From contig NC_068987.1 of assembly GCF_001194135.2 (NCBI RefSeq), positions 74,779,957 through 74,843,739 of the forward strand: a stretch of 63,783 nucleotides of DNA, in the 5' to 3' direction. The translations under genes were made by a program, and so were the position numbers. The notes beneath the pieces are model-generated. The model worked only from the letters and a program-made list of their open reading frames with translations, did no database searches and had not been told where the DNA came from. The first letter of the stretch is position 1, and each line of letters begins with the position of its first letter. The DNA comes from Octopus bimaculoides. Taxonomy: Eukaryota. Of this stretch, positions 4,423-61,052 are shown in pieces.

Positions 4423-4492
4423 AACATGGTCTTTGCATGATATTTGTTATGCTCCTTCATCAGATATATTTGTGCAGCCATATCTTGAGAAA
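4423..4492 (+). CDS. ptc: ptc exon A (first visible)
   Basis: tttacag|A ACA TGG... [23 protein letters not shown] |gtaagt; 70 nt, equivalent to human exon 4 (QWKLEHLCYK...). Confidence 0.9.
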
Positions 4493-7400
4493 GTAAGTAT
4501 CTCTGATTATTTCATGCAACTCAACTTCACAGACAATATCTACATTGATGTAACTAATGAAAAAACATATATATTCTTTTACTTCATTGTCTAAGTAATT
4601 TTGCAGCAAATCAATCTAATCAGCTGTCGAACGCCGACGAAGGGAAATAACCCTGAAATCCGGATACGTTCGTGCTGCTGATCAAGGTGAGAGGGATAAC
4701 TTCCCTTGGCAAACAGGACACAGTCGTGTGTCGATAAGCCAGCTGGAGGAGATGTCCTCCTGGGGCTAAAAGCAACAGTAACATCCACCCCTAGGGGTCA
4801 GCCACACTTAAGTGGCAATATACTACACTTTATCGTGCAGTTACTGTTAATACTTCATTTAGAGAATTAACATTGCTTGTTTTCACCTTTTCAATATCAG
4901 TGAAGAATTTCACTGGAAAAGAAGATATAAGGTTTGCCAGGTTTTTGTCTCTCTCACCAAGGTCATCAGCTGTCGAACGCCGANNNNNNNNNNNNNNNNN
5001 NNNNNNNNNNNNNNNNNNNNNNNNNNNNNNNNNNNNNNNNNNNNNNNNNNNNNNNNNNNNNNNNNNNNNNNNNNNNNNNNNNNNNNNNNNNNNNNNNNNN
5101 NNNNNNNNNNNNNNNNNNNNNNNNNNNNNNNNNNNNNNNNNNNNNNNNNNNNNNNNNNNNNNNNNNNNNNNNNNNNNNNNNNNNNNNNNNNNNNNNNNNN
5201 NNNNNNNNNNNNNNNNNNNNNNNNNNNNNNNNNNNNNNNNNNNNNNNNNNNNNNNNNNNNNNNNNNNNNNNNNNNNNNNNNNNNNNNNNNNNNNNNNNNN
5301 NNNNNNNNNNNNNNNNNNNNNNNNNNNNNNNNNNNNNNNNNNNNNNNNNNNNNNNNNNNNNNNNNNNNNNNNNNNNNNNNNNNNNNNNNNNNNNNNNNNN
5401 NNNNNNNNNNNNNNNNNNNNNNNNNNNNNNNNNNNNNNNNNNNNNNNNNNNNNNNNNNNNNNNNNNNNNNNNATATATATATATATATATATATACGTGG
5501 CTTAGTGGTTAGAGTATTTGGCTTACAATCATAAGGTTGTGAGTTCAAATCCTAGTAACCTGTATCCTTGAGCAAGACACTTTATTTAACATTGCTCCAG
5601 TCCACTAAAATGGCAAAAATGAGTAGTATCTGAATTCAGTATTTCAAAAGGCCAGCCTTGTCACATTCCGTGTCATACTGAATCTCCCTGAGAACTACGT
5701 TAAGGGTTCACATGTTTGCTCAGCCACTTGCATGTTAATTTCAGAAGCATGCTGTTCTGTTGGTCAGATCAACTAGAACCCTCTTCATTGTAAGTGACAG
5801 AGTGCCAATTTTATATATATATATATATATATATATGACAGGCTTCTGAACAGTTTCTACCTACTAAATCTCTCTTGCAAGGCTGTAGTAGATGACATGA
5901 CACATGCATAAGGTGTTATGCAGCAAGACTGACACAAAGCTACGTACTTTTCATATTTCATGGCAAGTCTCTAGAACTACACAAGGCAACATGAGATAAC
6001 AATCGCGATTCCTCTTGAAACTATCCACTACCTTACATTATAGAAATGACCAGTCATATTGGTTGAGTAGCTAAAATAATATTAAGTTCATCTCTCATCA
6101 TTTCCACTACACTGTAATCATGACTTGAGAGCAGACAGGAAGACAGTGGTAGAAAGATTTTATGTGGTGGTTTGCAGTGCCAGGAAGAAAGAACTTCAAT
6201 TCTCTGACCACCTGATCCAGTTTTTTTATTCTTTTACTTGTTTCAGTCATTGGATGGCATCCGTGCAGGAGCATCACTTTCAAGAGTTTAGTTGAACAAA
6301 CTGGGTTCAGTCCCACCACTTTGGCACTTTGAACGAATGTCTTTTGCTGTAGTCTCAGGTCAATCAGTAATTCATGCATGGAATTTGGTTGATGGAAACT
6401 TACAGAAGCTTGTCATGGTGTTTGCATGTATTTATACTGTTTACATTTATATTCTGTAGCTTAGCAGTAAAAAAAAAAACAGATTAATAAGTACAGGGGA
6501 CAATGTCCTCATGATCATCGTCGTTTAACGTCCGCTTTCCATGCTAGCATGGGTTGGACGATTTGACTGAGGGCTGGTGGACCAGGAGGCGACACTAGAC
6601 TCCAATCTGATTTGGCAGAGTTTCTACAGCTGGATGCCCTTCCTAATGCCAACCACTCTGAGAGTGTAGTATTCGAGAGTGTGATCTATTTAATTCTTAA
6701 AGGTGGTGCTCCAGCATGGCTACAATGCAGTGACTGAAACCAGCAAAAAAAAAAAAAGAAGTTTTTAATTAATCTAATTGGAATATTTTAGTGATCTAAC
6801 TTCAAATACTTGTTTATTATTTCACTGGGATTTTAACAACTAATTTTTTTCCTTCTTTTCTCGATAGATTCTGACTGACTTGTTACCATGTATGATTATA
6901 AGTCCTTTGGATTGCTTTTGGGAAGGAGCAAAGCTTTTTGGACCTGAAAATCATTTGTCTATAATGTAAGTAAACTATTTCTCTCAATTTTTAATTAAAT
7001 ATTGTTTTAACATCTTTGCTTGTATAAGTTGTTGGGCCTACCATGTCTTGATTTCATCTTTTCTTGTCTTTATCCTGCACCACTTCATATCATCATCGTT
7101 TAACGTCTGCCTTCCATGCTAGCATGGGTTGGACGATTTGACTGAGGACTGGCAAGCCAGAAGGCTGCACCAGGCTCCAATCTCATCTGGCAGAGTTTCT
7201 ACAGCTGGATGCCCTTCCTAATGCCAACCACTCCGAGAGTGTAGTGGGTGCTTTTACGTGCCACCAGCATGAGAGCCAGTCACACGCACAAGGGCCAATG
7301 GCCATTTTCTTCAGTCCTGCATCATCTCAATTGCGAGGGCTAGCATCGAAAGATCTCTCCTCACCAATTTCTTCTACCCCCTCATCTTCTTCAGTCTTCA

Positions 7401-10400
7401 TACCTTTCTCTGTCAATAAGTGCTCTCCTCCTCTACTGACGGCACACACCACTTTTTCACTAACAGTTTATTGTCTATTCCCATTGCATGTCCTTACCTA
7501 CACATGTGTTTGATATTTAGTGTGCTCAATACAGGAACCCCTACAAAGATTGTTAGAACTAGCCAAAGGATGAAAAGCAATGTCGACCTCAGCAGAATTT
7601 GAACTCAGAATATCAAGATGGAGGAAATACCACTAAGCATTTTTCCCAGTGTGCTAACGATTCTGCCAGCTCACCACCTTCAGAAATAATGCCAAATCTT
7701 TCTCATATCATACACTAAAGTACTACTGATTGAGGATGATGGGTTGGTCTAGGGCTATAAATAGATGACACTTGCCAAATGTGCCATGCAGTGGGACAGA
7801 ACCCAAAACCTTGTGGTTGAAAAGCAAACTTAACCACCCAGCAGGTCTACAATACTCTGTCATTTCATCACATTAACATGGGTGGTAGCTTAATCTATTA
7901 TTCTCACCATTACCTGTTGTTTTATCCCATGACAATCCTGAACCAACAGACCTGTGATCTGTGATTCCCAATGTGGGGCATGGTAATATTTTGGTGAGGC
8001 ATGCATAGGGTTATGTTGAATTTTTATACCTTTTGTACACAATGTTTAGTATACCAATAGAGAAAGGGGGCAATTTGAGAATAAGTTATTAAAAAACAAA
8101 ATTTTTTACATCCCTTCTGCGGACGATTTTATCAAATTTTGGACACTTTAGAGGCAACAGGTCGTTTTCATCTTATTCATTGATCACAGGTAATGATGAA
8201 CTGTGACTTTCCCATATTGTTTTAAGGCATTGAGATGTGATTTATAAAAAGATTTGTTTGCTATTTCTAGCTGGTTGAGTAACTACACAGAGGCTTTTTT
8301 TGTGAATATATCAGGAGTATAGCAGTGAACCCAATCAGTGCTCAACCAGCACCAGAACACACCCACTATATTTTTCCTATGTACTTTGCTTTTTCTTTTA
8401 GCCTTTTGCACTGCATCCACCCCTTTGCCCTTGCTGATTCTCCCTCCCCTTATCTTACATTCTCTTTTTAAATTACCACATCATCATCATCACTGACAAC
8501 TCCCACCTCTACACTAGTCCATCTAGACCACCAAGTAAGAATGGTACCCCACCCATTATTTTTTCGACATCGCCACTACTACTACTACCATCACTAGGAT
8601 TTCTAGCTTTCAACCAAGCAGTCAAGGTTCAAGTCTTAGCAAGGGAGCTAGATTCAATGAGCCAATGAAGTCAAATCTCACATGCCTTACCCACCATTTC
8701 TTGTGAAGATGCTACTGATAAAAACTACCTGTATTTCATCACTCTCTCTATTAGAAACAATAACCAATTCTCACTCAAATTATACCCTCTGTCTTTAAAA
8801 AAAAAAAAAGGAAAATATTTCCATTGGTCATAGTGCCTCTCTATCAGGATTGATTCGTGACAATAACACCACCATTATCAGTGCAAAGGTTTGTGTGTGG
8901 CAAATCAATCTATTTGAAAATACTAGCAACATCACTAAATCACAACATTAATAAAAGACACTGCAAAATGTAGTGACTGAAATAGAGAAACTAGATAGGT
9001 ACAACTGGAATGACTCCTCGCATAAGTAGGTCTACTGGATCAGTTTTCACCTGGGGCTAAACAACAACAGCATACTACCACTTCAAGGATATGTAGGTAA
9101 CAAATAATGCCATAAGCAGACCGCTGCTGCTGTCACTATAATCCTCCTCCTACTACTACTACTACGACTACTGCTACTTCCTCTACTGCTGTTTGTACCA
9201 CCAGTTTGGTCTGACTGATTAACCCTGATACTTTTATGGGTTTTCTCTCACTCTTTCTCCTTCCCTTCTCTTCATGCCTGCTGAAATGCCCCTTCACTCC
9301 TTACCTATACAGCTCAGCTTAGCTTAGGTGCCTGCCACCACTATTCACCATCATGGGTGGTCTACACAGATTAAAAAATACTGTTGCTGTTGCTACTACT
9401 ATTAATACTACTATTGCTACTACTACTAAGTAATTATAATGGTTTCTGATTGAGGCTCCAGGATGGGAATTTTGAGGGAAGACAGCTAATTGATAACCAT
9501 GAACTTCAATACTTGACAAGTACTTTGGTTTATAAGATTCCAGAAGGATGAAAGGTGGAATTGATCTTGGTAAGAATTGAACTCTGAATCTAAAGAGCTG
9601 GAACAAATACCACATTTTGGTTCAATGCTCTAATCATTCTGCCAATCTGCCACTTGACTATCAAGTTTTTATTCACCAGACATACATAGGTATTTTTCCA
9701 GAGGTATGGCAACCAGGAATCAATGACAAAACCTGTAGTGGATGTTCAGCTTGCTAGAAATAGCAGTCAGAATTCCTTCAAAATACACATCTTAATAAAA
9801 GAAAAGGACATTCGATTTAAGTGTAGATGTGACTAAGTGGTTGAATAGTTTGCCTCCTTACCTCATGGTTTCAGGTTCAATTCCACTGTGTGGCACCTTG
9901 GATGAGTGTCTTCTAATACAGCCCTTGACTAACCAAAGCTTTGTAAGTGGATTTGGTGAATTTGTAACTGAAACGGTTATGTGTATGTGTGTGTGAGAGA
10001 GAGCTTGTATGTTTCTATATTCTTGTCTTAACATCTTGTGATAAGTGTATATGAGTGCCACTGTTACAGAAACAGTGTCATTGAGATAGACAGACAGACA
10101 GACAACTATGTGCATGTCAGCATGTGTATATCTCTGTATGTCCTATCTATGTGTCTCTAATAGCCATCTTGTGTCTAAAACATTTAGTTGGCAGATAAAA
10201 TGTTTTGCAGTATTTATTGTGGCTTTCTAAACTCCTGAGTTTAAATTCCTCTAACATCAACTTTACTTTCCATCTTTTGTGGTTAATAAAGTAGCACTAG
10301 TCCAGTACTAGAGTTGATTCCCCCACCTTCTCTTTCTCTCTCTCTCTCTCTCCTTCTGTGTGTGTGTGTGTGTGTAGGTAAATTGGCAATGTTCAGACAT

Positions 10401-18833: not shown

Positions 18834-19254
18834 ATTAAGGGCATTACTATACATAAATGCCTCACACTAGACGGGACTCTAAAAGTCAAAACTACCATAA
18901 TAAGCACAAACGTGAGGCATTTATGTATAGTAATGCCCTTAATATAAATAAATATATTTATAGGGAATAATTGATGGATTTTTCACTTATGAGNNNNNNN
19001 NNNNNNNNNNNNNNNNNNNNNNNNNNNNNNNNNNNNNNNNNNNNNNNNNNNNNNNNNNNNNNNNNNNNNNNNNNNNNNNNNNNNNNNNNNNNNNNNNNNN
19101 NNNNNNNNNNNNNNNNNNNNNNNNNNNNNNNNNNNNNNNNNNNNNNNNNNNNNNNNNNNNNNNNNNNNNNNNNNNNNNNNNNNNNNNNNNNNNNNNNNNN
19201 NNNNNNNNNNNNNNNNNNNNNNNNNNNNNNNNNNNNNNNNNNNNNNNNNNNNNN

Positions 19255-26698: not shown

Positions 26699-29600
26699 TC
26701 TCACTCTCTCACTCAATCTCTCTCCCCCTTTGTCTCTCTTCAGCTTCCATTATCAGTACACCATTTCATGTCCAGTTTTCCATGCTGGTATGGTTTGGAC
26801 AGTTATCTTGAGGCATTGTTTTGTGACCAGATGTCCTTTTTGTTATCATTCCTTTTGCTCACTTCTTACAACGTACACACATGCACACACTTATGTGTGG
26901 ATGGAAATATTGATGTGTATTATGTGATGTGTGTGTGTACCTTGTCATACAGTAAACAGATGCATGGTTCACAATACATATTATCTCTATATATAATATA
27001 TCTTGTATGTGTTACCATAAACTGTTGTGTATATTATGTCATACTATATTTCAACAATTGTTTATTTCAGGCTGCAATTCTTGTGTTCTTCAATCTTAGT
27101 TCTATCCTTCTGATCCTACCTGCAGTTGTTAGTTGGGATTTAGTTCGACGTGAAGATAAACGAATTGATGTATTCTGCTGTTTCCAAAGGTATTTTTCTT
27201 CCTCCTCTCTTTCTATAAACAACTTTGCTTATATTACTGAGTTTTAAAACAGTTATTTTATATTATTACAAGCTTTTATGTCACCTATATGAACCATTAA
27301 CATTTTAATTAAAAGCAACTCATGCATTTACATGATTGTTCACCTTCCTAGAAATAGTAACTAAATCTCCCTCGGGTCACATCTTAGAAAAGAAGTACAC
27401 ATTGAATAATTTAGGTGTGAGCATACAACGAAAAGTAAGATTGTTGATTAGATCTGCTTAATCCTGCCTGGCCCTAGACTAAACCATAATAACGAAAAAA
27501 TGCAACAAATCAGAATAATTCTGTAGAAAACATTATTATACCAAGATTCATAGTGTTAAGAATTTCAGAGAACCCATTTATCATTTAACATCTGCCTAGG
27601 AAAGGTATTGCAATCTACTGGAGATTTGGTTAAATTCCACACAAAGAATATAAACTATTTTAGGGGAAAATTCCAAAGGTTTATTCCAGTATAATTTCCA
27701 AAGGCTTCCTAGTTTCTGAGAAACCTTTAAATGGTCATCTATCATTTGTTGAGGCAGATGTTGTGACATAAAGTGTTCATATTTAAATCCAAACACTCTC
27801 ATCATAATTTCATGGAAAAAATCTTTTGATAAATAATGTTAATTATAGTAATTAACTTAATGAGGAATTTTGATATTTTACTGAATGTTTCCAAAGATTT
27901 TACTATTGTGGAAATTTACTAAAACATAGAAAATGTATTTCATTAAAACTCTGGTCACAAAAAGGGTGGTAAATAAAGTTGTCACATGACTGTTGTTATG
28001 TAAAAATGCATGTCACAAGTCATCATGGGAATACCTATATGGTCACATGACCTGCTAGAATTAAAAGACAGACAGACACATTGAATAATGTAGTCCTAGA
28101 TATACTATATCTGCTCAAAAACATCATAGTGATGGATCTGCTTAGTTGAGGGCTAAGCTGTGTCTAAATAACTGCTTAACTATCATCATAACAATGAAGT
28201 TAGCTCTTTTCTTTTTAAATAAACTCTTCAGTAGAATAATTAACTGTGGGGTGGGTGGACACAATTTACTTGTACACATTCTTGCTTTGCCTAACACATA
28301 AAATGGCAGCTAATAAACCAAATTTTCTTTCCCACAGTTCAATGGCCAACCAAGTGATAGAATTACAACCACAAAGGGACAGTGAACACTGTTTATCACA
28401 TTTTGGTTACAGTTCAACACACCTGAGCATCCCAAATACCTCATCAAGTGTTGCTATTCATCAGACCGTAACTAAAATTTCTGTTAATGGCTCTCAGCCA
28501 GTCACCTGTTTAGCAATGCAGCCAACAGAACGTGTTGTCAATCAAAGCCACTCAACAAAGCCAGTACATTCAGAAAAAACACAAAAGGCCCCCGTTCCAG
28601 AAAAACATTCAAAGGCCCCCGTTCCAGAAAAACATTCAAAGACCCCTGTTCCAGAAAAACCTCTAAATGCTCTTGTCTCAGAAAAAACTCCAAATGCCCT
28701 TGTTCCAGAAAAATCTCCACATGCCCTTGTTCCAGAAAATCCTACAAATGCCCTAGTTCCAGGAAAACCTTCAAATGTTCCAGAAAAATATCCAAGAGCC
28801 ATTCTTCATGAAAAATCTCCAAAACTCCTTGTTTCTGATAAACCTCTGAAAGTCCTGTTTCCAGATAATTCACTCAAGTCCGTACTCACTGAAAAACCAC
28901 CAATTCAAACTCCTGTATATCCTCCAGGTAAGCCTGAATTTATTTTTATATATTTCAGGGCATCCAGTTGTAGAAACTCTGGTTCAATGAATTCTACCTG
29001 ATCCATGCAAGCTTGGAAAAATGGATGTTAAAATGATGATTGTGTGTGTGTACATATTCTTCCTTTATACATACAAGTGTATGTGTGTATCTGTCTGTAG
29101 ATTGAACAGTGAAATTATTATTTGAGAAAGATGAAAGGAAATTTTCGGTGGAGACCATAACCTCATTCTTCAATGATTTCTATTTGCAGCATGTCCATCC
29201 AATACATCGTCTCGTCAGTGTTTGACACCAATTGACAGCGTCTCATTCAAGGATTGTTGGCTACAGATGCAGCATGAATGCTTCAACTTCTCGTTAGCAA
29301 ATATTGTTAAGAATCATTATGGGCCATTTCTACAGAAGACACCAACAAAGGTGGGTTCAGCAACACAAGTGACATTTGTTGTTGCTTTCCATAACTGTTT
29401 CTGTTAGTTATGATCTTTGTGTTTTTTATTGCTTAGTTTCAGATCAACCGTGATTACTAACACACTTAATGTAGTGAGCACATAATGAGAAAGAGCAATC
29501 AATATGTTATAATTTACAATTAAAAATTTCTGAAATATTTTATAGAAACCTAAATTTTTTTATTGATTCTTATTTTGAATTGGGATGATGAAAGACTCAT

Positions 29601-30593: not shown

Positions 30594-31008
30594 NNNNNNN
30601 NNNNNNNNNNNNNNNNNNNNNNNNNNNNNNNNNNNNNNNNNNNNNNNNNNNNNNNNNNNNNNNNNNNNNNNNNNNNNNNNNNNNNNNNNNNNNNNNNNNN
30701 NNNNNNNNNNNNNNNNNNNNNNNNNNNNNNNNNNNNNNNNNNNNNNNNNNNNNNNNNNNNNNNNNNNNNNNNNNNNNNNNNNNNNNNNNNNNNNNNNNNN
30801 NNNNNNNNNNNNNNNNNNNNNNNNNNNNNNNNNNNNNNNNNNNNNNNNNNNNNNNNNNNNNNNNNNNNNNNNNNNNNNNNNNNNNNNNNNNNNNNNNNNN
30901 NNNNNNNNNNNNNNNNNNNNNNNNNNNNNNNNNNNNNNNNNNNNNNNNNNNNNNNNNNNNNNNNNNNNNNNNNNNNNNNNNNNNNNNNNNNNNNNNNNNN
31001 NNNNNNNN

Positions 31009-31044
<36 letters not shown>

Positions 31045-34000
31045 GTCATAGATATGTAATAAAAGATTTCCAGACAATGGACATGAGTTAAAAATAAGAA
31101 CAGTAATAAATGAGTGAAGAACGAATATATAGTGAATGTGTTTATTTGGTGGGGAAAAAAAAGATCATCCCGAAATACAATATATATATATATGTACACT
31201 TTCTCCACTATTTTCTTCTCTTCTCTCCCAATTTCCCTCTCATTCTCATTTTCATTTTGCTTGTGTTTCTCCACAGAACAACTTTGATTATGCTCACAAC
31301 CAGCAGTTACTGTATTCCTATCACAAAGCATTCCAACAAGTCAATCACATCATCAAGCGAGAAGATGGTTCTCTGCCCACATTCTGGCTACAACTTTTCA
31401 GAGAATGGCTCCATGGTATGCTACTAATTTTAAAAAAACAACCCTTTATTTCCTTCTTTCTCCTTACCTTGGGTTCATGTATTAATTTCTTCAGCTTTCA
31501 TTTGTTATACATCTGAAATCCTTCGCTTACTCAACATTTTTTGCCCTTTTTAATTTCAGATTTACAAAAGTCTTTTGATGATGATGTGGCTAATAAGTGC
31601 ATTGGTCCACGGAAATGGTACCAAAATGCCTCTCAGAATGGTATTTTGGCTTTCCGACTTCTGGCCCAGACTGGCAATGTTGACGATCCTTTTGATGTCA
31701 ATCAGGTAAGAATTGATTAGAGATTCTTTTACAGATTTCAGTCATTGGACTGTGGCCATACTGAAGCACCATATTCAAAGATTTAAGTCAATTATATCAG
31801 CCTCAATATTTGTTTTTAAGTCTGTTATTTCCTCTGAATCCACTAATAAAGCGATGCCTAAAGAGCAGCAATATGAACTAAACTAGTTTTTAGATTTGTG
31901 TAAGCATAAACACATGCATCTATATATGTTTATAGATATATATATAATACCCGTCAGAGTGTAAGTATCTTGAGAGAAAAGCTGAACATTAGAAGCATCA
32001 GTTGTGGCGTGCAAGAGAGACGATTGCGCTGGTATGGACATGTGGTGAGAATGGAGGAGGATAGCTGCGTGAAAAAGTGCCACACCCTAACAGTTGAGGG
32101 AACCCGTGGAAGAGGTAGGCCCAGGAAGACCTGGGCTGAGGTGGTGAGGCAAGACCTTCGTACATTGGGCCTCACCGAGGCGATGACTACGGACCGAGAC
32201 CTTTGGAAATGGGCTGTGCGTGAGAAGACCCGGCAAGCCAAGTAAGATNNNNNNNNNNNNNNNNNNNNNNNNNNNNNNNNNNNNNNNNNNNNNNNNNNNN
32301 NNNNNNNNNNNNNNNNNNNNNNNNNNNNNNNNNNNNNNNNNNNNNNNNNNNNNNNNNNNNNNNNNNNNNNNNNNNNNNNGCGGGTGGCACATAAAAGACA
32401 CCATTTCGAGCGTGGCCGTTTTCGTGCGGGTGACACGTAAAAGCACCCACTACACTCTCTGAGTGGTTGGCGTTAGGAAGGGCATCCAGCTGTAGAAACT
32501 CTGCCAAATCAGACTGGAGCCTGGTGTTGCCATCCGGTTTCACCAGTCCTCAGTCAAATCGTCCAACCCATGCTAGCATGGAAAGCGGACGTTAAACGAT
32601 GATGATGATGATGATGATGATATATAATGCAGACTCATGCTCACACACATACATGCAATGACAGTAGGTGGAAACTAACAATGTGGAAACATTGTTAGTT
32701 TCCACCTACCAGATCATATTCTCATAGTAAATATAATTTTGGTCAATTCCAAAAGTATTGTAAAAGATACCTGCCTAGAGCTTTGAACCTCACACAACGC
32801 AATCATGCCTGCATAGGTGTGTGTGTGTGTGTGTGTGTGATATAGATATTTACAAACATGGAAGGTGGTTGGCAAAAGACAAAAAACAGCAGACAAAATA
32901 CTTTTTGTATCATTCCATTCTGAATTGAAATTTTGCCCACTTCTGCTTTGCCTCACATTCTTCCAAGATCCCTACAATAAGTACTGGTATTGATGCAGTT
33001 GACTATACCTTTGAAGACAGTGCCCCAGCATGGCCATTAAAAAAAAATTAAACACAGTATATTGCTTTTGTCAAATATGCAATACATAGCTGATATAGAC
33101 TACATACACCATGGTACATGTTGTATGGCATGTGTATGTGGTACCTTAACACAATGCAATACAGAATTAACATAATGGCATACAGCATACAGGCAGATAT
33201 ACACACTGTAAGCATAGACTGTACAGACACCTTTATGTTAAACACTATAAATACATACCTGAACCACTTAGCCACATTGTATTATAACCTATACTATTTC
33301 TCCCTGTATTTCCAGGTTCACAAAGTACGTCTTGTTAAGGATGGCATCATCAACCCATCAGGATTCTATAACTATTTGTCAGCCTGGCGAGGAACTGATG
33401 TGTTAGGATACGACTCAGCTATGGGTGATTTCTACCCACCATTAAAATCCTTTGTCCATGACTATCGAGATAGAAGCTTAGAAGGTAAGCTTGAGCAGAT
33501 TTATGTCAGGTGGCAATTCAATAGAATTGATGTGACTTTTTGTAATTAAGAAGCTTGTATCATTTCGCCATCTAGCTGAAGATTATACAGAAACATGGAG
33601 TACAGTGTGTCAACCTAAACAGGTTGTACTCCCTCGACTGTTCAGTCTATTTTTGGACCCTGAACTGATATGTGTTTCAATGCTGGAAACTAAACTGTAA
33701 GAGCCTACCTTTGTTTATACAACTGACCAGTAGAAGATTTCTATTCTGCAGTCTTCAATATCTTTCTTTCTCAGTTGATTTACTGGCCATTTTATTTTCA
33801 TTGTGGATGACATGCCCACTATATTCAACAAAATGATGAGTTGGTAAGACAAAAAGATAGTCAAGATTGCTCTTAATGTGTTCATATCATAAGGTTTTTC
33901 CACAGAAAAAGCCTGAAATCATTGACATGAATGCTAATAAAAGAAGTGAATTAGTATTTGAACAACATCTATAGACGTTTGGTGGGGTTGGACCACTGAT

Positions 34001-42206: not shown

Positions 42207-43021
42207 CAAAATAAAAAGAATTATTTAACATAAGTAAGTTGAAGAAGTCTTTTATGAAACAATACAACTGAAGACGTAATCAATCAACATCATAATCTAG
42301 ATTATTACCCATCTTTAGAGTATTCAATTATTCATTCTTTTACACCACTTTTTTCCATACTGGTATGAGTTGGTCACTGTAACAAAATTTTAATTTTTTG
42401 TTTTAGGCTTTGATCAGTGTTATTTCTTATTTGCTTCTGTCTAGAAATCAAAAGGAATGACTACTGTTCTGTTAATATATTAAGAAGTAAATATTGTAAA
42501 TTACTCATCTCTAACAACAAAGGAATTAACAGTATGAATATGTGTGTGTGTATGTATGTATATATATATATNNNNNNNNNNNNNNNNNNNNNNNNNNNNN
42601 NNNNNNNNNNNNNNNNNNNNNNNNNNNNNNNNNNNNNNNNNNNNNNNNNNNNNNNNNNNNNNNNNNNNNNNNNNNNNNNNNNNNNNNNNNNNNNNNNNNN
42701 NNNNNNNNNNNNNNNNNNNNNNNNNNNNNNNNNNNNNNNNNNNNNNNNNNNNNNNNNNNNNNNNNNNNNNNNNNNNNNNNNNNNNNNNNNNNNNNNNNNN
42801 NNNNNNNNNNNNNNNNNNNNNNNNNNNNNNNNNNNNNNNNNNNNNNNNNNNNNNNNNNNNNNNNNNNNNNNNNNNNNNNNNNNNNNNNNNNNNNNNNNNN
42901 NNNNNNNNNNNNNNNNNNNNNNNNNNNNNNNNNNNNNNNNNNNNNNNNNNNNNNNNNNNNNNNNNNNNNNNNNNNNNNNNNNNNNNNNNNNNNNNNNNNN
43001 NNNNNNNNNNNNNNNNNNNNN

Positions 43022-47592: not shown

Positions 47593-48422
47593 CATACATA
47601 TATGCATATGTGTGTGTATATACTGGTATATAGTTACCATATTTGGAAGGATTGATCATCGCAGGATTTGTCCTTCTGTTAGGAAGCAAGCTGTCTGCAA
47701 TGATTGTGTTCCCTGTATAGTGACCATAGTTGTCGAATGTATTGAACAATCTATTTATTTATCTGTAAATATTATAAATATATAAATGATATATTAAAAA
47801 AACGAAAATATAAAACATCAAAATTTCTGGAAAATAATGAAAGAAAATGTGAAAATGAAATAAAGATTGTTAAAGAAATAAACTGTCTTTGTTGTTTTTT
47901 AAAAATTTATTTCATTTTAAATCTGCTGTTCTTTGCTATTAAAGTTGGGAAGGTATGTTCCAGTACAGTACCTCACGATATTCTGCTGTCCTTTATTGTT
48001 GCTTTTTTTTATTTGGCATCCTGAATTCTGATCTCACTATTTGCTCAATACATTTTTTTCTGGTTTTACCACTTGCATCATTTTTCAACCAAATATCCTT
48101 CAAATGTTTTTTACATATCCTTCAAAATATATTTTATCCCATCTTTCTATGTACCCTTCCTTGCTTGCATACATGCCATGTGTAAAACTACATCTAGTTG
48201 CTTCAAAGTACTGAAACAATGTATTCATATAATGTATCTTCCATTACCCTTAAACATTGCACTCCAGAACCAGCCACTCACTATACTTACTAAACTCTCA
48301 ATTTCTCTCTACAGATATATGCTCTAATCTTCAAAAACACATTGCAGTGTATCCCATTCTGAAGAAAGGGAATTTCTTTGGCTCTGCCAAGCATCATCCT
48401 ATTGCACTCAATATTTCTAAGG

Positions 48423-49090
48423 TGAACATTAGAAGCATCAGTTGTGGTGTGCAAGAGAGACGATTGCGCTGGTATGGACATGTGGTGAGAATGGATGAGG
48501 ATAGCTGCGTGAAAAAGTGCCACAGTTGAGGGAACCCGTGGAAGAGGTAGGCCCAGGAAGACCTGGGCTGAGGTGGTGAGGCAAGACCTTCGTACATTGG
48601 GCCTCACCGAGGCGATGACTACTGACCGAGACCTTTGGAAATGTGCTGTGCGTGAGAAGACCCGGCAAGCCAAGTAAGATCGTTGCCAGTGCCCCTGGAC
48701 TGGCTCTTGTGCGGGTGGCACATGAGATGCACCATTTTGAGCGTGGCCATTGCCAGTACCGCCTGACTGGCTCCCGTAGGATTTTCGAGTGAGATCGTTG
48801 CCAGTGCGGGTGGCACATAAAAGACACCANNNNNNNNNNNNNNNNNNNNNNNNNNNNNNNNNNNNNNNNNNNNNNNNNNNNNNNNNNNNNNNNNNNNNNN
48901 NNNNNNNNNNNNNNNNNNNNNNNNNNNNNNNNNNNNNNNNNNNNNNNNNNNNNNNNNNNNNNNNNNNNNNNNNNNNNNNNNNNNNNNNNNNNNNNNNNNN
49001 NNNNNNNNNNNNNNNNNNNNNNNNNAAATCGTCCAGCCCATGCTAGCATGGAAAGCGGACGTTAAACGATGATGATGATGATGATGATGA
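48423..49090 (+). mobile_element. 5'-truncated RTE-clade LINE, near-identical to the 31955 copy
   Basis: Same [11 protein letters not shown] segment with a short deletion; (GAT)n tail; internal gap. Confidence 0.88.
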
Positions 49091-49400: not shown

Positions 49401-51959
49401 CTGCCAAAATTTAAAACCAATATTTCTAAAGTACTAGTGACAGCCATTAACTGCAATGTTGTTCAACAACTGGAATCTTTCTCACTAGTGAACACCAGCA
49501 CAGGTTCCATAAAGCTAAATCCATCGGTGACCTACTCTCATTTGTCAACCACCAGTGAGCTCTCACCTTTGAGAAATTTAGTGAATGCAATGTTTTTGCC
49601 TTCGATATCAGCAAAGACTTTCAACCATATGTCATAATTAAAATACGTGCTTCATTGTGTCTCATCTCATGGATCAGTAGCTTCTTATCAGATTGGGTGC
49701 TTGCTATTCCTTAATCAACTCTGGCATGCTCTGGTATTCAGTTTTATCCCCCACTTTTTTTTCTTCTCGACATCAGTGACCTACTTACTGTTACTTCCTA
49801 TTATACTTTTATCCTTCATTCTCCCTCAACCTTCTCCATCCATGCAACATTTACATACAAGCTAAACATCACAATATTCCTTGAACAGTGACCTCAAAGC
49901 ATCCTCCAATAGTGCTGTATCAATTTTGTTTCTTTTAACAAGGAAACGCAAACACTATTCATATCATGAGAACATTATTGTACCACACACTCTTTAAACA
50001 CATGCAGCATGCAACTAAAGCGTTCACGATCACTTCAAATGTTAGGCCTCACTATCTCTTAAGGGTTTCTCCTGATGAAAGCACATCTTTAACTGAGCTA
50101 GGACTACATTGCAGTGACAAGCCCTTTTCTTCAGAGCTAAGAGATACTTCATCCCCCAGGTGAGTTCCATAATGAACTATTTTTTGTTCCCATATCTGGA
50201 AACATCCTAGACTGTATCTAGAAAACAGCCATCTAGCTGATGGCCAATAGACACAAGCCCAGAGGTGTACTGTCTGCTCCCTGTCTAACTTTGACCCCTG
50301 CTTCTGAGAACTGACTGGTCTCACGGCACATTTACTGAAGCATTCCTAACCCACTCATCTCTCTCCTCATCACCCTTGTCGTATCCATCTCCCCAGGCCC
50401 TGCTCTAACTATATCCAATCCTTCATTGTCACTACCTACTGGAACTCCCACCTTGCTCGTGTCTTTGCTGTAGATGTTGAATAGCAATAGCCCAAGAGGA
50501 ACATAAATGGCATGAATCCCACCAGCTCCAGAATGCTTGTAAGCAGCCTCTTTCTCTAGACCCAACAAATAAAAAAAATAAAACACTTGTCCATACCAGT
50601 TCAGTTTTCCCTCTTATACATTACAGCTGTTTTACAAAGCACTTTTTTTGTCTCAGCACACTTGTACTCCATCATTCATACATAATGACATTACTGATAT
50701 TACACATCCAATGGAATATACTCAATTCGCTAGACATTTTTCTATTTTTCATTTTATGGCCGCAGACCATTTACCTATGAATTGATTTGATTGTCCAACA
50801 TCCACTTGCATAAATGGAGATGAGCTGCTAGATATTATTCGGCGCCAACTCTCCTTCAAGTAACATCCTATGTCTTAAATTCAGTTCTTGACACAGTACA
50901 TCTGAACAAATGAATATCTTTGATCAAGGCTGAATTGGGACCACACATTAACAATAGTTTTAAAGATTTTTCAGTATGTGAAAATTTATATTTTTTTCAC
51001 AAGCTTGTCATGTCAGAATTTGCAACCTTTTAAGTTCTCATCTCATCTTCTTCACCCATATATTCCTGGGAGGGTCATGGGTGGAGAGTCCTCAAGCATA
51101 CCTTCTGTTGGGTTTTGTTAAAAGTAACCGTCTCCAGTTGATTTGGCTGAATCCCCAAGTGACAACAACCAAGCTTATGGATGTTATCCAACTTTCTTGT
51201 TTGCAGACTACCCCTGAGTCTCTTGCTGTGTTCAGCATTTCTTTTCTGGGTCATTCTTACCACAATGTCAGAGCTGTGAGCTCTCAACTCAGGTAAACGT
51301 AGTGGCTCTATTTGGAGCACCTCTCTGAACTCCGAGCTATGCACTCTATCAACTAATGTTACTTTAAAGAACCTTTGGAGGAACATCATTTTTTGCTTGT
51401 ATTTGTCATTGATAAGGTCGTGAATAGTGACAAAAAGACTCGACAGAGTAAACTAACAATTGATTAATTGTTCAATCAACACATTAAACAGACCATTGAA
51501 TAGTCAGTTGGTAAAATAAAGAAGTTTTATTGAACTATCCCTGTGGGATAGCAAGTCAACTGTCTGGAACTGTATAAAGGCACATGCACACTGTTGATGA
51601 GGGACAATGTGGCGTGCGCAGGCACTTTGTGAAGACAGTCCTAGAAGTCGTTGAGAAGAGATATTGTTTGTTCTGTACTGTTTCTGATCTAAATTTGTAT
51701 TGTTATAAGTCCACATTATAAAGTGGCATACACAGTGAGTTCAAAGGACATAACAACGTCGACACGGCACAACAGTAGTGACAAGACATTCAAAGCTCAC
51801 AGTGGACATTCTTAGCATGGAAGACCTATTAGTGTCCATGGTTCAGTTGTAACAGCAACAACAACAGAAACAGCAAGAACAGGTACAACGACAACAACAA
51901 AATCAACATTTGTTGGAATTATTGTTGCAGTCAAAAAACACTTCAGGTTCATTTTCAGC

Positions 51960-56100: not shown

Positions 56101-56413
56101 TTCCCCATTTGCTAGCTAAGACAGGAAGAGTCCTTACGATCCATCAGCGGGCTAAAGGATAGATCCCTTATTCTCCATCTCCAAACAGCTGGTCTAGGGA
56201 GGATAACCCATCCTCACTATCGCTGGACCTTTTATTCTCTAATGACCTTTTGACCATTGACCATAAAAACTTTCCACCTCTGAGAGGTGAAGAGTTAAAT
56301 TTGCTGTAATTTAGCCCCAGAAAACATCATCTCCAGTTGGCTATACGACACGATCTGTGTCCTTATATTTTCAAACAAGGGAATCTAGCACCCCTACTCA
56401 GCTCAAAACAATA

Positions 56414-56458
56414 TCTGTGTATCGCTATTTCCGGGTTATTTTCTTTCATCAGCACAGA
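56414..56458 (-). ncRNA. Decayed minimal type I hammerhead, homologous to the 4619 motif
   Basis: Minus strand: TCTGTG [CTGATGA] AAGA-aaataa-CCCG [GAAA] TAGCGA T A CACAGA. Stem I intact; same loop II and AUA site; stem II and helix III palindrome damaged. Confidence 0.6.
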
Positions 56459-56779
56459 ATAATTGTTCGGCTAGAGGTGGCACTGCCAAATTCCCATTCG
56501 AAATATATAGTTTACAAAATGACAACTAGTCATTGATCTATAAATTAGAAAATTACTATTTCCAAATCTCACGAGACATATTCAGCAACAGTACTTTACT
56601 GGGAATCGAAACCACGATCCTATGACCGCGATACTGCTGCCCTAACCACTGGGCCATTGCACCTCCACGTATATATGTATGTATGTCATTATTCAGTTTA
56701 TTTCAAGATTTCTTGCCAATAGAGAAAAATCCAGTTTCTAACCTAGATCCAAGATTACTTCATTGAAATTTCATGCTTG

Positions 56780-60184: not shown

Positions 60185-61052
60185 CTTATGTTTGCTGCTC
60201 CCACACCTGCTGAGGACATGCATAAGCTTGCAAGGAATGAAGCCAGTATGCTCCGCTGGATGTGTAATGTCAGTGTGCATACTCGACAGAGTGTAAGTAC
60301 CTTGAGAGAAAAGTTGGACCTAAGAAGCATCAGTTGTGGTCTGCAAGAGAGACAATTGTGCTGGTATGGTCATGTGGTGAGAATGGATGAAGATAGCTGT
60401 GTGAAAAAGTGTCACACCCTAGCAGTGGAGGGAACCTGTGGAAGAGGTAGGCCCAGGAAAACCTGGGTTGAGGTGGTGAGGCACGACCTTCAAATGTTAG
60501 GCCTCACCGAGGCAGAAATATGCAGTGCGTGAGAAGACCAGGCAAGCCAAGTGAGACCATAATCCGAGGCCTCTGCCAGGGGTGTAGCCAGTCCACTTAT
60601 GCATACTTTTCCTTCATTGGACACTAAACTCTGCTTGCAAAGACCTGTTGAGCCAAGTGAAATCGAAATCGTGATTGAACCAAATTCGATGACTGGCACC
60701 TGTGCCAGTGGAGCGCTAAGAGCACCGTCAGAGTGTGATCATTGCCAGAGCAGCTGTCTGGCTTCTGTGCCAGTGGCACGTAAATAGTACCATTTGAGCG
60801 TGATCGTTACCAGCGTTGCCTTACTGCCACTTGTGCCGGTGGCATGTGAAAAAGCATTCGAGCGTGGTCATTGCCTAACTGGCCCTCATGCCGGTGGCAC
60901 ATAAAAGCACCCACTACACTCTCAGAGTGGTTGACCTTAGGAAGGGCATCCAGCTGTAGAAACTTTGCCAGATCAGATTAGAGCCTAGTGCAGCCATCTG
61001 GTTTGCCAATCCTCAGTCAAATCGTCCAACCCATGCTAGCATGGAAAGTGGA
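60185..61052 (+). mobile_element. 5'-truncated RTE-clade LINE, more diverged
   Basis: LARNEASMLRWMCNV...WYGHVVRM...GRPRKTW; repeat-rich 3' UTR; (GAT)n tail. Confidence 0.88.

What the first reader, a model, noticed from the sequence alone, without database searches (positions are those of the whole stretch)
4619..4983. Sense-strand hammerhead ribozyme tandem (retrozyme-like circRNA unit) inside a Patched intron
Seen: 126 nt after the exon A donor there is a complete minimal type I hammerhead fold. Stem I is ATCAGC/GCTGAT plus CGAACG/CGTTCG around an internal loop. The core reads CCGACGA...GAAA, stem II is AGGG/CCCT with an AAATAA loop, and helix III is the 8-nt palindrome ATCCGGAT, with an AUA site after 4666. 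The same 5' half restarts exactly 346 nt later (4965) and runs into a 489-N gap. The unit ends pair with each other (GGTGAGAG 4686-4693 with CTCTCACC 4951-4958; TGGCAAAC 4707-4714 with GTTTGCCA 4932-4939), and there are several internal hairpins. Established: minimal HHRs with a palindromic helix III occur in Penelope-like pLTRs and in metazoan non-LTR retrozymes, cleave as dimers, and tandem copies of a few hundred nt release monomers that circularise. Inference: ptc pre-mRNA could supply both hammerheads, release a 346-nt structured circRNA and be cut in its intron, linking a self-cleaving element to Hedgehog-responsive transcription. The core has U4->C (C3-G8 kept) in both copies, which is either a family variant or an attenuating change.
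Basis: partly seen in the sequence, partly recalled or inferred. Interest (0 to 1): 0.88.

Follow-up and report, generated by a model that had tools for sequence, protein, structure and literature searches.

The report
Hammerhead retrozyme repeat in Patched intron
A copy of a known kind of small mobile repeat that carries a self-cutting hammerhead RNA motif sits, in the gene's own orientation, in an intron of a Patched gene; its catalytic core has an unusual base, so it is most likely a weakly active or silent passenger, not a Hedgehog-linked switch.

Summary
The described sequence is real and not chance. Window 4619-4683 (+) folds as a metazoan type I hammerhead: 6-bp helix I extended by an outer stem, 4-bp helix II, GAAA, an 8-nt palindromic helix III and an AUA cleavage site after 4666. 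The unit restarts 346 nt later (19 nt visible), then a 489-N gap follows. The host gene is Patched on the + strand. The element lies 126 nt into a ~2.4-kb intron (4493-6867).

A diverged relative on the minus strand (56283-56467) keeps the fold through five compensatory stem I pairs. The 346-nt unit has 44.5% GC and is very strongly structured (z = -8.4). It fits the published non-LTR retrozymes (170-400 nt tandem units with type I hammerheads and palindromic helix III).

Caveats:
- The core has C at position 4 (CCGACGA); U4C is reported to lower activity considerably.
- Rfam does not detect either copy.
- The second ribozyme is unseen.
- Whether C4 is a family state or a copy-specific change is unresolved. 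The relative has CUGAUGA, but it is the more AT-decayed copy, and both core C's sit in CpGs.

Verdict: a new member of a known kind. The link to Hedgehog signalling is unsupported speculation.

The parts
4423..4492 (+). Patched exon ('exon A'; ...[23 protein letters not shown]), donor AAA|GTAAGT
   Evidence: Reading. It joins in frame to the exon at 6868.
4493..6867 (+). Host intron (about 2.4 kb as assembled, including the 489-N gap)
   Evidence: Donor at 4493; acceptor ...ctcgatag| at 6867. The next exon encodes [23 protein letters not shown], 74% identical to my recalled human PTCH1 probe.
4619..4683 (+). Hammerhead 1, complete type I fold. Outer stem I 4619-4624/4677-4682; inner stem I 4628-4633/4667-4672; core CCGACGA 4634-4640 (C4, C7); stem II 4641-4644/4651-4654; loop 2 4645-4650; GAAA 4655-4658; palindromic helix III 4658-4665; predicted cleavage after A4666
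4619..4964 (+). One full 346-nt retrozyme-type unit (GC 44.5%; circular MFE -126.1 kcal/mol, z = -8.4)
4965..4983 (+). First 19 nt of the next unit, identical to 4619-4637 and including CCGA of the core
4984..5472 (.). Assembly gap (489 N) hiding the rest of the array and its 3' junction; (AT)11 follows at 5473-5495
6868..6965 (+). Next Patched exon (approximate 3' end)
56283..56467 (-). Diverged relative ('copy 2') covering the hammerhead plus about 125 nt. The hammerhead is at 56467-56408: core CUGAUGA 56452-56446, stem I UCUGUG/CACAGA plus ACAAU/AUUGU, stem II broken (AAGA/CCCG), helix III AUAGCGAU. No tandem partner is seen.
   Evidence: (nhmmer E 2.6e-9)

Best explanation
Window 4619-4983 is the start of a short tandem array of a non-LTR retrozyme. 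One full 346-bp unit and the first 19 bp of the next are visible; the rest is lost in the assembly gap. Non-LTR retrozymes are non-coding, non-autonomous retroelements, thought to be mobilised by Penelope-like elements. Each unit carries a metazoan type I hammerhead ribozyme.

The array was inserted in the sense orientation 126 nt into a ~2.4-kb intron of a Patched gene.

Inferred mechanism for the family: multimeric transcripts fold two neighbouring hammerheads into a double hammerhead through the palindromic helix III (AUCCGGAU). Each cuts after its AUA. The 346-nt monomers, whose ends pair into a compact branched fold, are then circularised by a cellular RNA ligase.

For this particular copy the core reads CCGACGA (C at position 4) and stem II opens with A-U. 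I therefore expect weak or no self-cleavage. The element is most likely a tolerated passenger in the intron with no dedicated role in Hedgehog signalling.

Shown: sequence, fold, homology, covariation, host gene and strand. Inferred: mobilisation route, dimer cleavage, circularisation and low activity.
For: Motif and chance:
- All described elements are present.
- The descriptor gives one hit in the window and 0 in 100 randomisations.
- The 65-nt domain folds at -24.3 kcal/mol, z = -4.1.

Family origin:
- A second, diverged copy on the other strand matches with nhmmer E 2.6e-9 (66% identity in the BLAST alignment) over about 170 nt.
- It keeps stem I through changes on both sides at 5 of 6 inner pairs. 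No slid register gives more than 1 such pair.
- It also has a different but perfect outer stem, ACAAU/AUUGU.

Architecture:
- It equals the published canonical metazoan type I hammerhead: helix I 6 bp, helix II 4 bp, helix III 1-2 bp capped by a palindromic loop, active as a dimer.
- Published retrozyme hammerheads have the same palindrome design: mussel ACGCGCGU, axolotl ACACGUGU with UA site.
- A covariance model built only from four published retrozyme hammerheads ranks 4628-4672(+) first and 56414-56458(-) second in an unfiltered scan of the whole window.

Retrozyme features:
- 346-nt period, within the published 170-400 nt range; mussel units are 350-390 bp.
- GC 44.5%, and a circular fold with z = -8.4 in which the unit ends pair.
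- No homologue for its open frame.
- No RT or GIY-YIG domain in nearby open frames.

Dimer: the homodimer fold (-53.5 versus 2 x -24.3 kcal/mol) is a double hammerhead with an 8-bp intermolecular helix III and unpaired cores.

Host: PTCH1 structures match at E 4e-25, colinear on the + strand; flanking exons are mapped.

Attenuation: U4C 'considerably decreases activity in vitro' (Perreault et al. 2011), and 10.1-11.1 is the most conserved stem pair.

Ordinariness: about 43% of Xenopus retrozyme copies are intronic.
Against: - Rfam hammerhead models do not match either copy, even at E<=10 on short slices.
- My own model's scores (13.1 and 12.9 bits, E about 0.2) are not individually significant.
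- Only one complete unit is visible. Tandem structure rests on a 19-nt restart before a gap.
- Only two family members could be examined. No eukaryotic genome collection was searchable, so copy number and the family consensus are unknown.
- 'Passenger with low activity' is not proven. U4C viroid variants remain infectious.
- The high CpG content of the ribozyme (o/e 1.57 against 0.30 for the window) suggests a young, undecayed copy.
- Substitution asymmetry suggests that C4 may be the family state rather than damage.
Confidence: 0.78

Rival explanations
1. First reader's functional reading. Both hammerheads are active in the ptc pre-mRNA. They cut the intron co-transcriptionally and release a 346-nt RNA that is circularised. 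Patched transcription, itself Hedgehog-responsive, would then drive a circRNA and/or be damped by intron cleavage.
For: - Sense orientation in the intron.
- All helices are intact, and the dimer fold leaves the cores free.
- The monomer is compact and its ends pair.
- The ribozyme is CpG-rich, so it looks young.
- C4 may be the family's own state, and U4C variants can work in vivo.
- There is precedent for intronic sense-strand ribozymes affecting host mRNA: amniote intronic hammerheads and the CPEB3 ribozyme.
Against: - U4C and an A-U 10.1-11.1 pair both lower activity.
- The second ribozyme is unobserved.
- The monomer MFE fold sequesters C3-C4-G5 against CGG of helix III.
- Retrozymes are under-represented in introns after normalisation, which is read as selection against genic insertion. 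Surviving sense copies are therefore likely to be the weak ones.
- There are no expression data and no conservation data.
Confidence: 0.17
2. It is a fragment of an autonomous Penelope-like element: a pLTR carrying its hammerhead, not a stand-alone retrozyme array.
For: - PLE terminal repeats carry type I hammerheads that act as dimers.
- Retrozymes are phylogenetically close to pLTRs.
- The gap could hide sequence.
Against: - The unit restarts after 346 nt with no reading frame in between.
- No open frame of 65 aa or more within several kb of either copy has an RT or GIY-YIG match.
- PLE min-HHRs have helix II of 7-8 bp, helix I of 4-5 bp and no helix III. Here the values are 4 bp, 6 bp and a 2-bp stem with a palindromic loop.
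Confidence: 0.04
3. Chance hairpin-rich intron sequence that merely resembles a hammerhead.
For: Rfam finds nothing, and the core departs from consensus at U4.
Against: - 0 hits in 100 randomisations.
- A homologous second locus with compensatory stem I changes.
- Both loci top a scan with a model built from independent published hammerheads.
Confidence: 0.01

Closest known systems
Non-LTR retrozymes of invertebrates, e.g. Mytilus galloprovincialis (Cervera & de la Pena 2020, PMC7229834)
   Same: - Type I hammerhead in tandem units of about 350 bp.
- GC below 50%; non-coding; compact self-paired monomer.
- Helix III is an 8-nt palindrome (mussel ACGCGCGU, here AUCCGGAU).
- 4-bp helix II.
   Different: - The core has C4 instead of U4, and stem II opens with A-U.
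- No primary sequence similarity to the published mussel unit beyond the motif.
- Copy number and circRNA expression are unknown here.
Amphibian retrozymes / newt satellite hammerheads (axolotl Ax353, Ax330)
   Same: - Short palindromic helix III (ACACGUGU) and a UA cleavage site.
- 330-353-nt units.
- Poor cleavage as monomer and efficient cleavage as dimer. The dimer fold is predicted here too.
   Different: - Different phylogenetic host and unrelated unit sequence.
- The axolotl cores used in the published constructs are canonical CUGANGA.
Min-HHRs in the terminal repeats of Penelope-like elements (Cervera & de la Pena 2014, PMC4209133)
   Same: Type I topology, dimer-dependent design, retroelement context. 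PLEs are the probable mobilising partner and evolutionary source.
   Different: Min-HHRs lack helix III, have a longer helix II (7-8 bp) and a shorter helix I, and flank an RT/GIY-YIG frame. None of this applies here.
Natural U4C hammerhead variant of a viroid (Ambros & Flores 1998, as cited in Perreault et al. 2011, PMC3088659)
   Same: The same core substitution. It was reported as strongly reduced in vitro yet sufficient in vivo.
   Different: That is a type III hammerhead in a plant viroid RNA, not a genomic animal repeat. I could not read the primary paper.
Intronic sense-strand self-cleaving ribozymes of vertebrates (amniote intronic hammerheads; CPEB3 HDV-like ribozyme, PMC10919898)
   Same: A ribozyme transcribed as part of a host intron. 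Cleavage competes with splicing and can tune mRNA output.
   Different: Those are single-copy and deeply conserved, with canonical cores. This one is a repeat-family copy with a variant core and no evidence of conservation.

Membership tests
Hammerhead ribozyme, type I (canonical metazoan form) | Three helices around the core, with helix I open-ended (type I topology) | tested here: met
   Helix I 6 bp plus a 6-bp outer stem, helix II 4 bp closed by a 6-nt loop, helix III closed.
Hammerhead ribozyme, type I (canonical metazoan form) | Conserved boxes apart from U4: C3, G5, A6, G8, A9 / G12 A13 A14 / A15.1-U16.1 / H17 not G (published filter CUGANGA / GAAAY / RUH) | tested here: met
   C-C-G-A-C-G-A, GAAAU and AUA are present. 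All listed positions conform; the filter wording is.
Hammerhead ribozyme, type I (canonical metazoan form) | U at core position 4 | tested here: not met
   C at 4635 in unit 1 and at 4981 in unit 2. The diverged copy 2 has U.
Hammerhead ribozyme, type I (canonical metazoan form) | Helix I 6 bp, helix II 4 bp, helix III 1-2 bp capped by a 2-4-nt palindromic loop (Cervera & de la Pena 2014) | tested here: met
   CGAACG/CGUUCG; AGGG/CCCU; AU/AU with CCGG. The dimer fold forms the 8-bp helix III.
Hammerhead ribozyme, type I (canonical metazoan form) | Match to the curated covariance model (Rfam Hammerhead_1 and clan) | tested here: not met
   No hammerhead family is listed at gathering score or at E<=10 on 96-nt and 171-nt slices. 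A model built from 4 published retrozyme hammerheads ranks both copies top, but only at E about 0.2.
Hammerhead ribozyme, type I (canonical metazoan form) | Stems maintained by covariation among relatives | tested here: met
   5 of 6 inner stem I pairs are changed on both sides between the two copies, and the outer stem is also replaced by a different perfect helix. There are only two sequences; 2 of the 5 changes could come from CpG decay on both arms. Stem II is broken in copy 2.
Hammerhead ribozyme, type I (canonical metazoan form) | Site-specific self-cleavage | not testable with these tools
   Needs in vitro transcription and cleavage assays.
Non-LTR retrozyme (metazoan) | Type I hammerhead within head-to-tail repeats of about 150-450 bp | tested here: inconclusive
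   The period is 346 nt, with one full unit and an identical 19-nt restart. The array then runs into a 489-N gap, so two or more complete units are not seen.
Non-LTR retrozyme (metazoan) | Low GC (<50%), non-coding, no LTR/PBS/PPT | tested here: met
   GC is 44.5%. The open frame across units has no homologue. No long terminal repeats lie around the unit.
Non-LTR retrozyme (metazoan) | Monomer predicted to form a stable, highly self-paired (circular) structure | tested here: met
   Circular MFE is -126.1 kcal/mol against -83.7 +/- 5.1 for 200 dinucleotide shuffles (z = -8.4). Only 1 of 200 random window segments folds as well.
Non-LTR retrozyme (metazoan) | Multi-copy dispersed family in the genome | tested here: inconclusive
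   One further diverged copy lies in the same 64-kb window. The host genome could not be searched, and scans of viral and metagenome collections gave only chance matches.
Non-LTR retrozyme (metazoan) | Target-site duplications; expression as linear and circular RNA | not testable with these tools
   The 3' junction is in the gap, and no transcript data are available.
Penelope-like element (pLTR) | Hammerhead-bearing repeat flanking an RT plus GIY-YIG reading frame | tested here: not met
   No such frame or domain lies near either copy.

The most novel reading that the evidence does not exclude
CCGACGA (C4) is the consensus core of a still-active retrozyme family in this animal. That would make it a natural U4C hammerhead that works as a dimer. 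The ptc-intron array would then be transcribed with the host gene, self-cleave, release 346-nt circles and measurably reduce or time ptc mRNA output.

The hint is the substitution pattern. Copy 2, the copy with the 'canonical' CUGAUGA, is the more AT-decayed of the two: 24 versus 8 GC-to-AT differences, and 7 C>T versus 0 T>C. Both core C's in copy 1 sit in CpGs in a genome with CpG o/e of 0.30. Copy 2's T's may therefore be deamination products and not the ancestral state.
Probability: 0.1. Interest if true: 0.6.

Novelty: new member of a known kind. Interest (0 to 1): 0.3.

Why it matters
As it stands, this is routine repeat annotation: one more retrozyme-type hammerhead repeat, here in an intron of a developmental gene.

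It would matter to ribozyme specialists if the C4 core proved to be the working consensus of a propagating animal family, because natural active U4 variants are very rare.

It would matter to people studying intronic ribozymes if cleavage 126 nt downstream of a 5' splice site affected ptc mRNA yield.

It also shows that curated covariance models miss this class of short-helix-III, core-variant hammerheads, while a descriptor scan or a comparison with a relative finds them.

Tried and rejected
1. Rfam, at gathering score and at permissive E-values on short slices, gave no hammerhead hit. I did not accept this as proof of absence, because the descriptor, homology and covariation evidence is strong.

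2. Finding more family copies failed.
   - Degenerate-pattern scans of metagenome and viral contigs gave only chance matches confined to the pattern.
   - A search with the 106-aa open frame that runs across unit junctions, hoping for called 'proteins' on other assemblies, found nothing.

3. Identifying the organism or another assembly failed.
   - A search with concatenated Patched exon peptides found nothing at E<=1e-10.
   - Exact look-ups of two repeat-derived ORFs found nothing.
   - The organism remains unidentified. It is a metazoan with Patched, GC 37%, CpG o/e 0.30 and tRNA-like SINE heads.

4. PLE hypothesis: no RT or GIY-YIG signal in open frames around either copy.

5. An upstream partial unit before 4619: the three-way alignment of the upstream flanks shows only weak AT-rich similarity. 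I set the 5' boundary at about 4612-4619.

6. The naive inference 'copy 2 has CUGAUGA, so C4 is a copy-specific defect' was rejected as unsafe after the substitution-asymmetry and CpG analysis.

7. The primary U4C paper (PMC147498) is not held.
Full report
**The observation.** The sequence is as described. From 4619 the + strand reads AUCAGC-UGU-CGAACG-CCGACGA-AGGG-AAAUAA-CCCU-GAAA-UCCGGAU-A|CGUUCG-UGCU-GCUGAU. In standard hammerhead numbering:
- Inner helix I is 6 bp (4628-4633 with 4667-4672), extended past a 3x4-nt internal loop by a 6-bp outer stem (4619-4624 with 4677-4682).
- The core is C3 C4 G5 A6 C7 G8 A9.
- Helix II is 4 bp with a 6-nt loop.
- G12 A13 A14 follow, then A15.1-U16.1 and U15.2-A16.2 closing a CCGG loop. 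Together these make the 8-nt palindrome AUCCGGAU.
- H17 is A4666.

The first 19 nt recur identically at 4965-4983, 346 nt downstream.

**Not chance.** A hammerhead descriptor I wrote (helix I >=5 bp, II >=3, III >=2, core C[CT]GANGA, GAAA, UH) finds exactly this one site on both strands of the window. It finds none in 100 first-order Markov randomisations. The 65-nt domain folds 4.1 sd better than dinucleotide shuffles.

**Host gene.** Peptides from candidate exons match solved PTCH1 structures at E 4e-25, colinear on the + strand. A tblastn with a human PTCH1 fragment that I recalled from memory maps eight exon matches in order, from 6.9 to 27 kb. The exon upstream of the element ends at 4492 (AAA|GTAAGT). 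It joins in frame to an exon starting at 6868 that encodes [23 protein letters not shown]. The element therefore lies on the sense strand, 126 nt into an intron of about 2.4 kb as assembled. The organism could not be identified.

**A relative in the same window.** BLAST and nhmmer with the unit find one diverged relative on the minus strand, 56283-56467 (nhmmer E 2.6e-9; 66% identity in the BLAST alignment). Its hammerhead reads ACAAU-UAU-UCUGUG-CUGAUGA-AAGA-AAAUAA-CCCG-GAAA-UAGCGAU-A|CACAGA-U-AUUGU.
- Between the two copies, five of the six inner helix I pairs differ on both sides yet stay paired. No slid register gives more than one such pair.
- The outer stem is also replaced by a different perfect helix.
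- Loop 2, GAAAU and GAUAC are conserved.
- Helix II is broken in copy 2 (three of four pairs), and no tandem partner follows it.

This is good evidence that the fold, not just the sequence, is what the family maintained. The caveats are that there are only two sequences, and two of the five double changes are of the CpG-decay type on both arms.

**What kind of hammerhead.** Cervera & de la Pena 2014 define the canonical metazoan type I hammerhead as follows: helix I 6 bp, helix II 4 bp, and helix III 1-2 bp capped by a 2-4-nt palindromic loop. It is too unstable to cleave well alone, and it is active as a double hammerhead when a second copy is nearby. Copy 1 fits this exactly.

The PLE 'min-HHR' is a different thing: helix II 7-8 bp, helix I 4-5 bp, no helix III. 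So 'minimal' is a mislabel.

The constructs in the supplement of Cervera & de la Pena 2020 show the same design: mussel GAA-ACGCGCGU-C, axolotl GAA-ACACGUGU-A. A covariance model built only from those four published hammerheads, run unfiltered over the whole window, ranks 4628-4672(+) first and 56414-56458(-) second. Both are full-length and in the correct register, but only at 13 bits and E about 0.2. That is supportive, not significant on its own.

RNAcofold of two copies gives -53.5 kcal/mol against 2 x -24.3. The structure is a double hammerhead with an 8-bp intermolecular helix III and both cores unpaired. The monomer MFE instead pairs C3-C4-G5 with CGG of the helix III loop.

**What kind of repeat.** The unit is 346 nt with 44.5% GC. 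As a circle it folds to -126.1 kcal/mol, against -83.7 +/- 5.1 for shuffles (z = -8.4). Only 1 of 200 random window segments does as well. Its open frame has no homologue. No RT or GIY-YIG domain lies near either copy.

These are the published features of metazoan non-LTR retrozymes: 170-400-nt tandem units, GC below 50%, compact circRNAs, with mussel units of 350-390 bp. In Xenopus about 43% of such copies overlap introns, although they are under-represented there after normalisation. An intronic copy is therefore ordinary.

**The core variant.**
- C4 is present in both visible units.
- Perreault et al. 2011 state that U4C 'considerably decreases activity in vitro' but kept a viroid infectious. 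They also state that 10.1-11.1 is the most conserved stem pair. Here that pair is A-U, and copy 2 also has A at 10.1.
- I therefore expect attenuated cleavage.

Is C4 damage, or the family's state? Copy 2 has CUGAUGA, which at first suggests damage. But three points weigh against that inference:
- Copy 2 is the decayed copy. Copy 1 has G/C where copy 2 has A/T at 24 sites, against 8 the other way (p = 0.007). All 7 C/T differences have C in copy 1.
- The window is strongly CpG-depleted (o/e 0.30), while the copy 1 hammerhead is CpG-rich (o/e 1.57).
- Both C4 and C7 precede G. Deamination of a CCGACGA ancestor would produce exactly CTGATGA.

The polarity is therefore open, and only a genome-wide census can settle it.

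**Mechanism and verdict.** Most likely (about 0.78) this is a young copy of a retrozyme array, riding in the ptc intron with weak or no self-cleavage. It has precedents in kind: amniote intronic hammerheads and the CPEB3 ribozyme. It is not excluded, but it rests on an unseen second ribozyme, a variant core and no expression data. I give it about 0.17.

The kind of element is well known. This is a new member, with a possibly interesting core variant.

Noticed in passing
window 56283-56467 (-): A diverged solo relative of the retrozyme unit. It has a canonical CUGAUGA core but a broken helix II, and it is much more AT-rich than copy 1 (40% against 53% GC over the aligned part).
   Followed up: yes
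window 4600-4692 (+): The hammerhead is bracketed by splice-like signals: a pyrimidine-rich ...tttgcag| acceptor ending at 4606 and a CAAG|GTGAGA donor at 4686/4687. An 80-nt cassette (4607-4686) would shift the frame and read into a TGA. It could act as a poison exon, but no splice-site scoring or transcript evidence was available.
   Followed up: no
window 5497-5560 (+) and 56590-56675 (-): tRNA-like SINE heads (e.g. GTGGCTTAGTGGTTAGAG...GGTTGTGAGTTCAAATCC). ARAGORN calls no tRNA anywhere in the window. One of them lies directly after the gap that follows the retrozyme array.
   Followed up: partly
window 31970-32245 (+), 48257-48529 (+), 60188-60532 (+), 51078-51452 (-): Repeated open frames with the motif [19 protein letters not shown]...GRGRPRKTW. 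They look like C-terminal tails of a non-LTR (LINE-type) retrotransposon ORF. Pfam gave no domain, and exact-protein look-ups found nothing.
   Followed up: partly
window gaps 4984-5472, 18994-19254, 30594-31008, 42572-43021: Assembly gaps are flanked by (AT)n, (TA)n or (TC)n microsatellites, which suggests that assembly breaks at simple or tandem repeats. The gap sizes may not be real, so the number of hidden retrozyme units is unknown.
   Followed up: no
whole window: Strong CpG depletion (o/e 0.30, with TG and CA in excess at 1.32 and 1.34) and GC of 37%. This implies germline CpG methylation in this animal. The copy 1 hammerhead stands out at CpG o/e 1.57.
   Followed up: partly
window 28246-29001 (+): A 251-aa open frame with imperfect PVPEK/LVPEK-type repeats, lying between the Patched exons at 27.2 kb and 33.3 kb. 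It may be a lineage-specific expansion of the cytoplasmic loop between the two transmembrane halves. It was not verified as an exon.
   Followed up: no
window 7142-7510 (+) and 32187-32543 (-), 48619-49049 (-): Another repeated open frame (…[31 protein letters not shown]…) occurs at least three times in the window. It is an unidentified interspersed repeat with no Pfam match.
   Followed up: no
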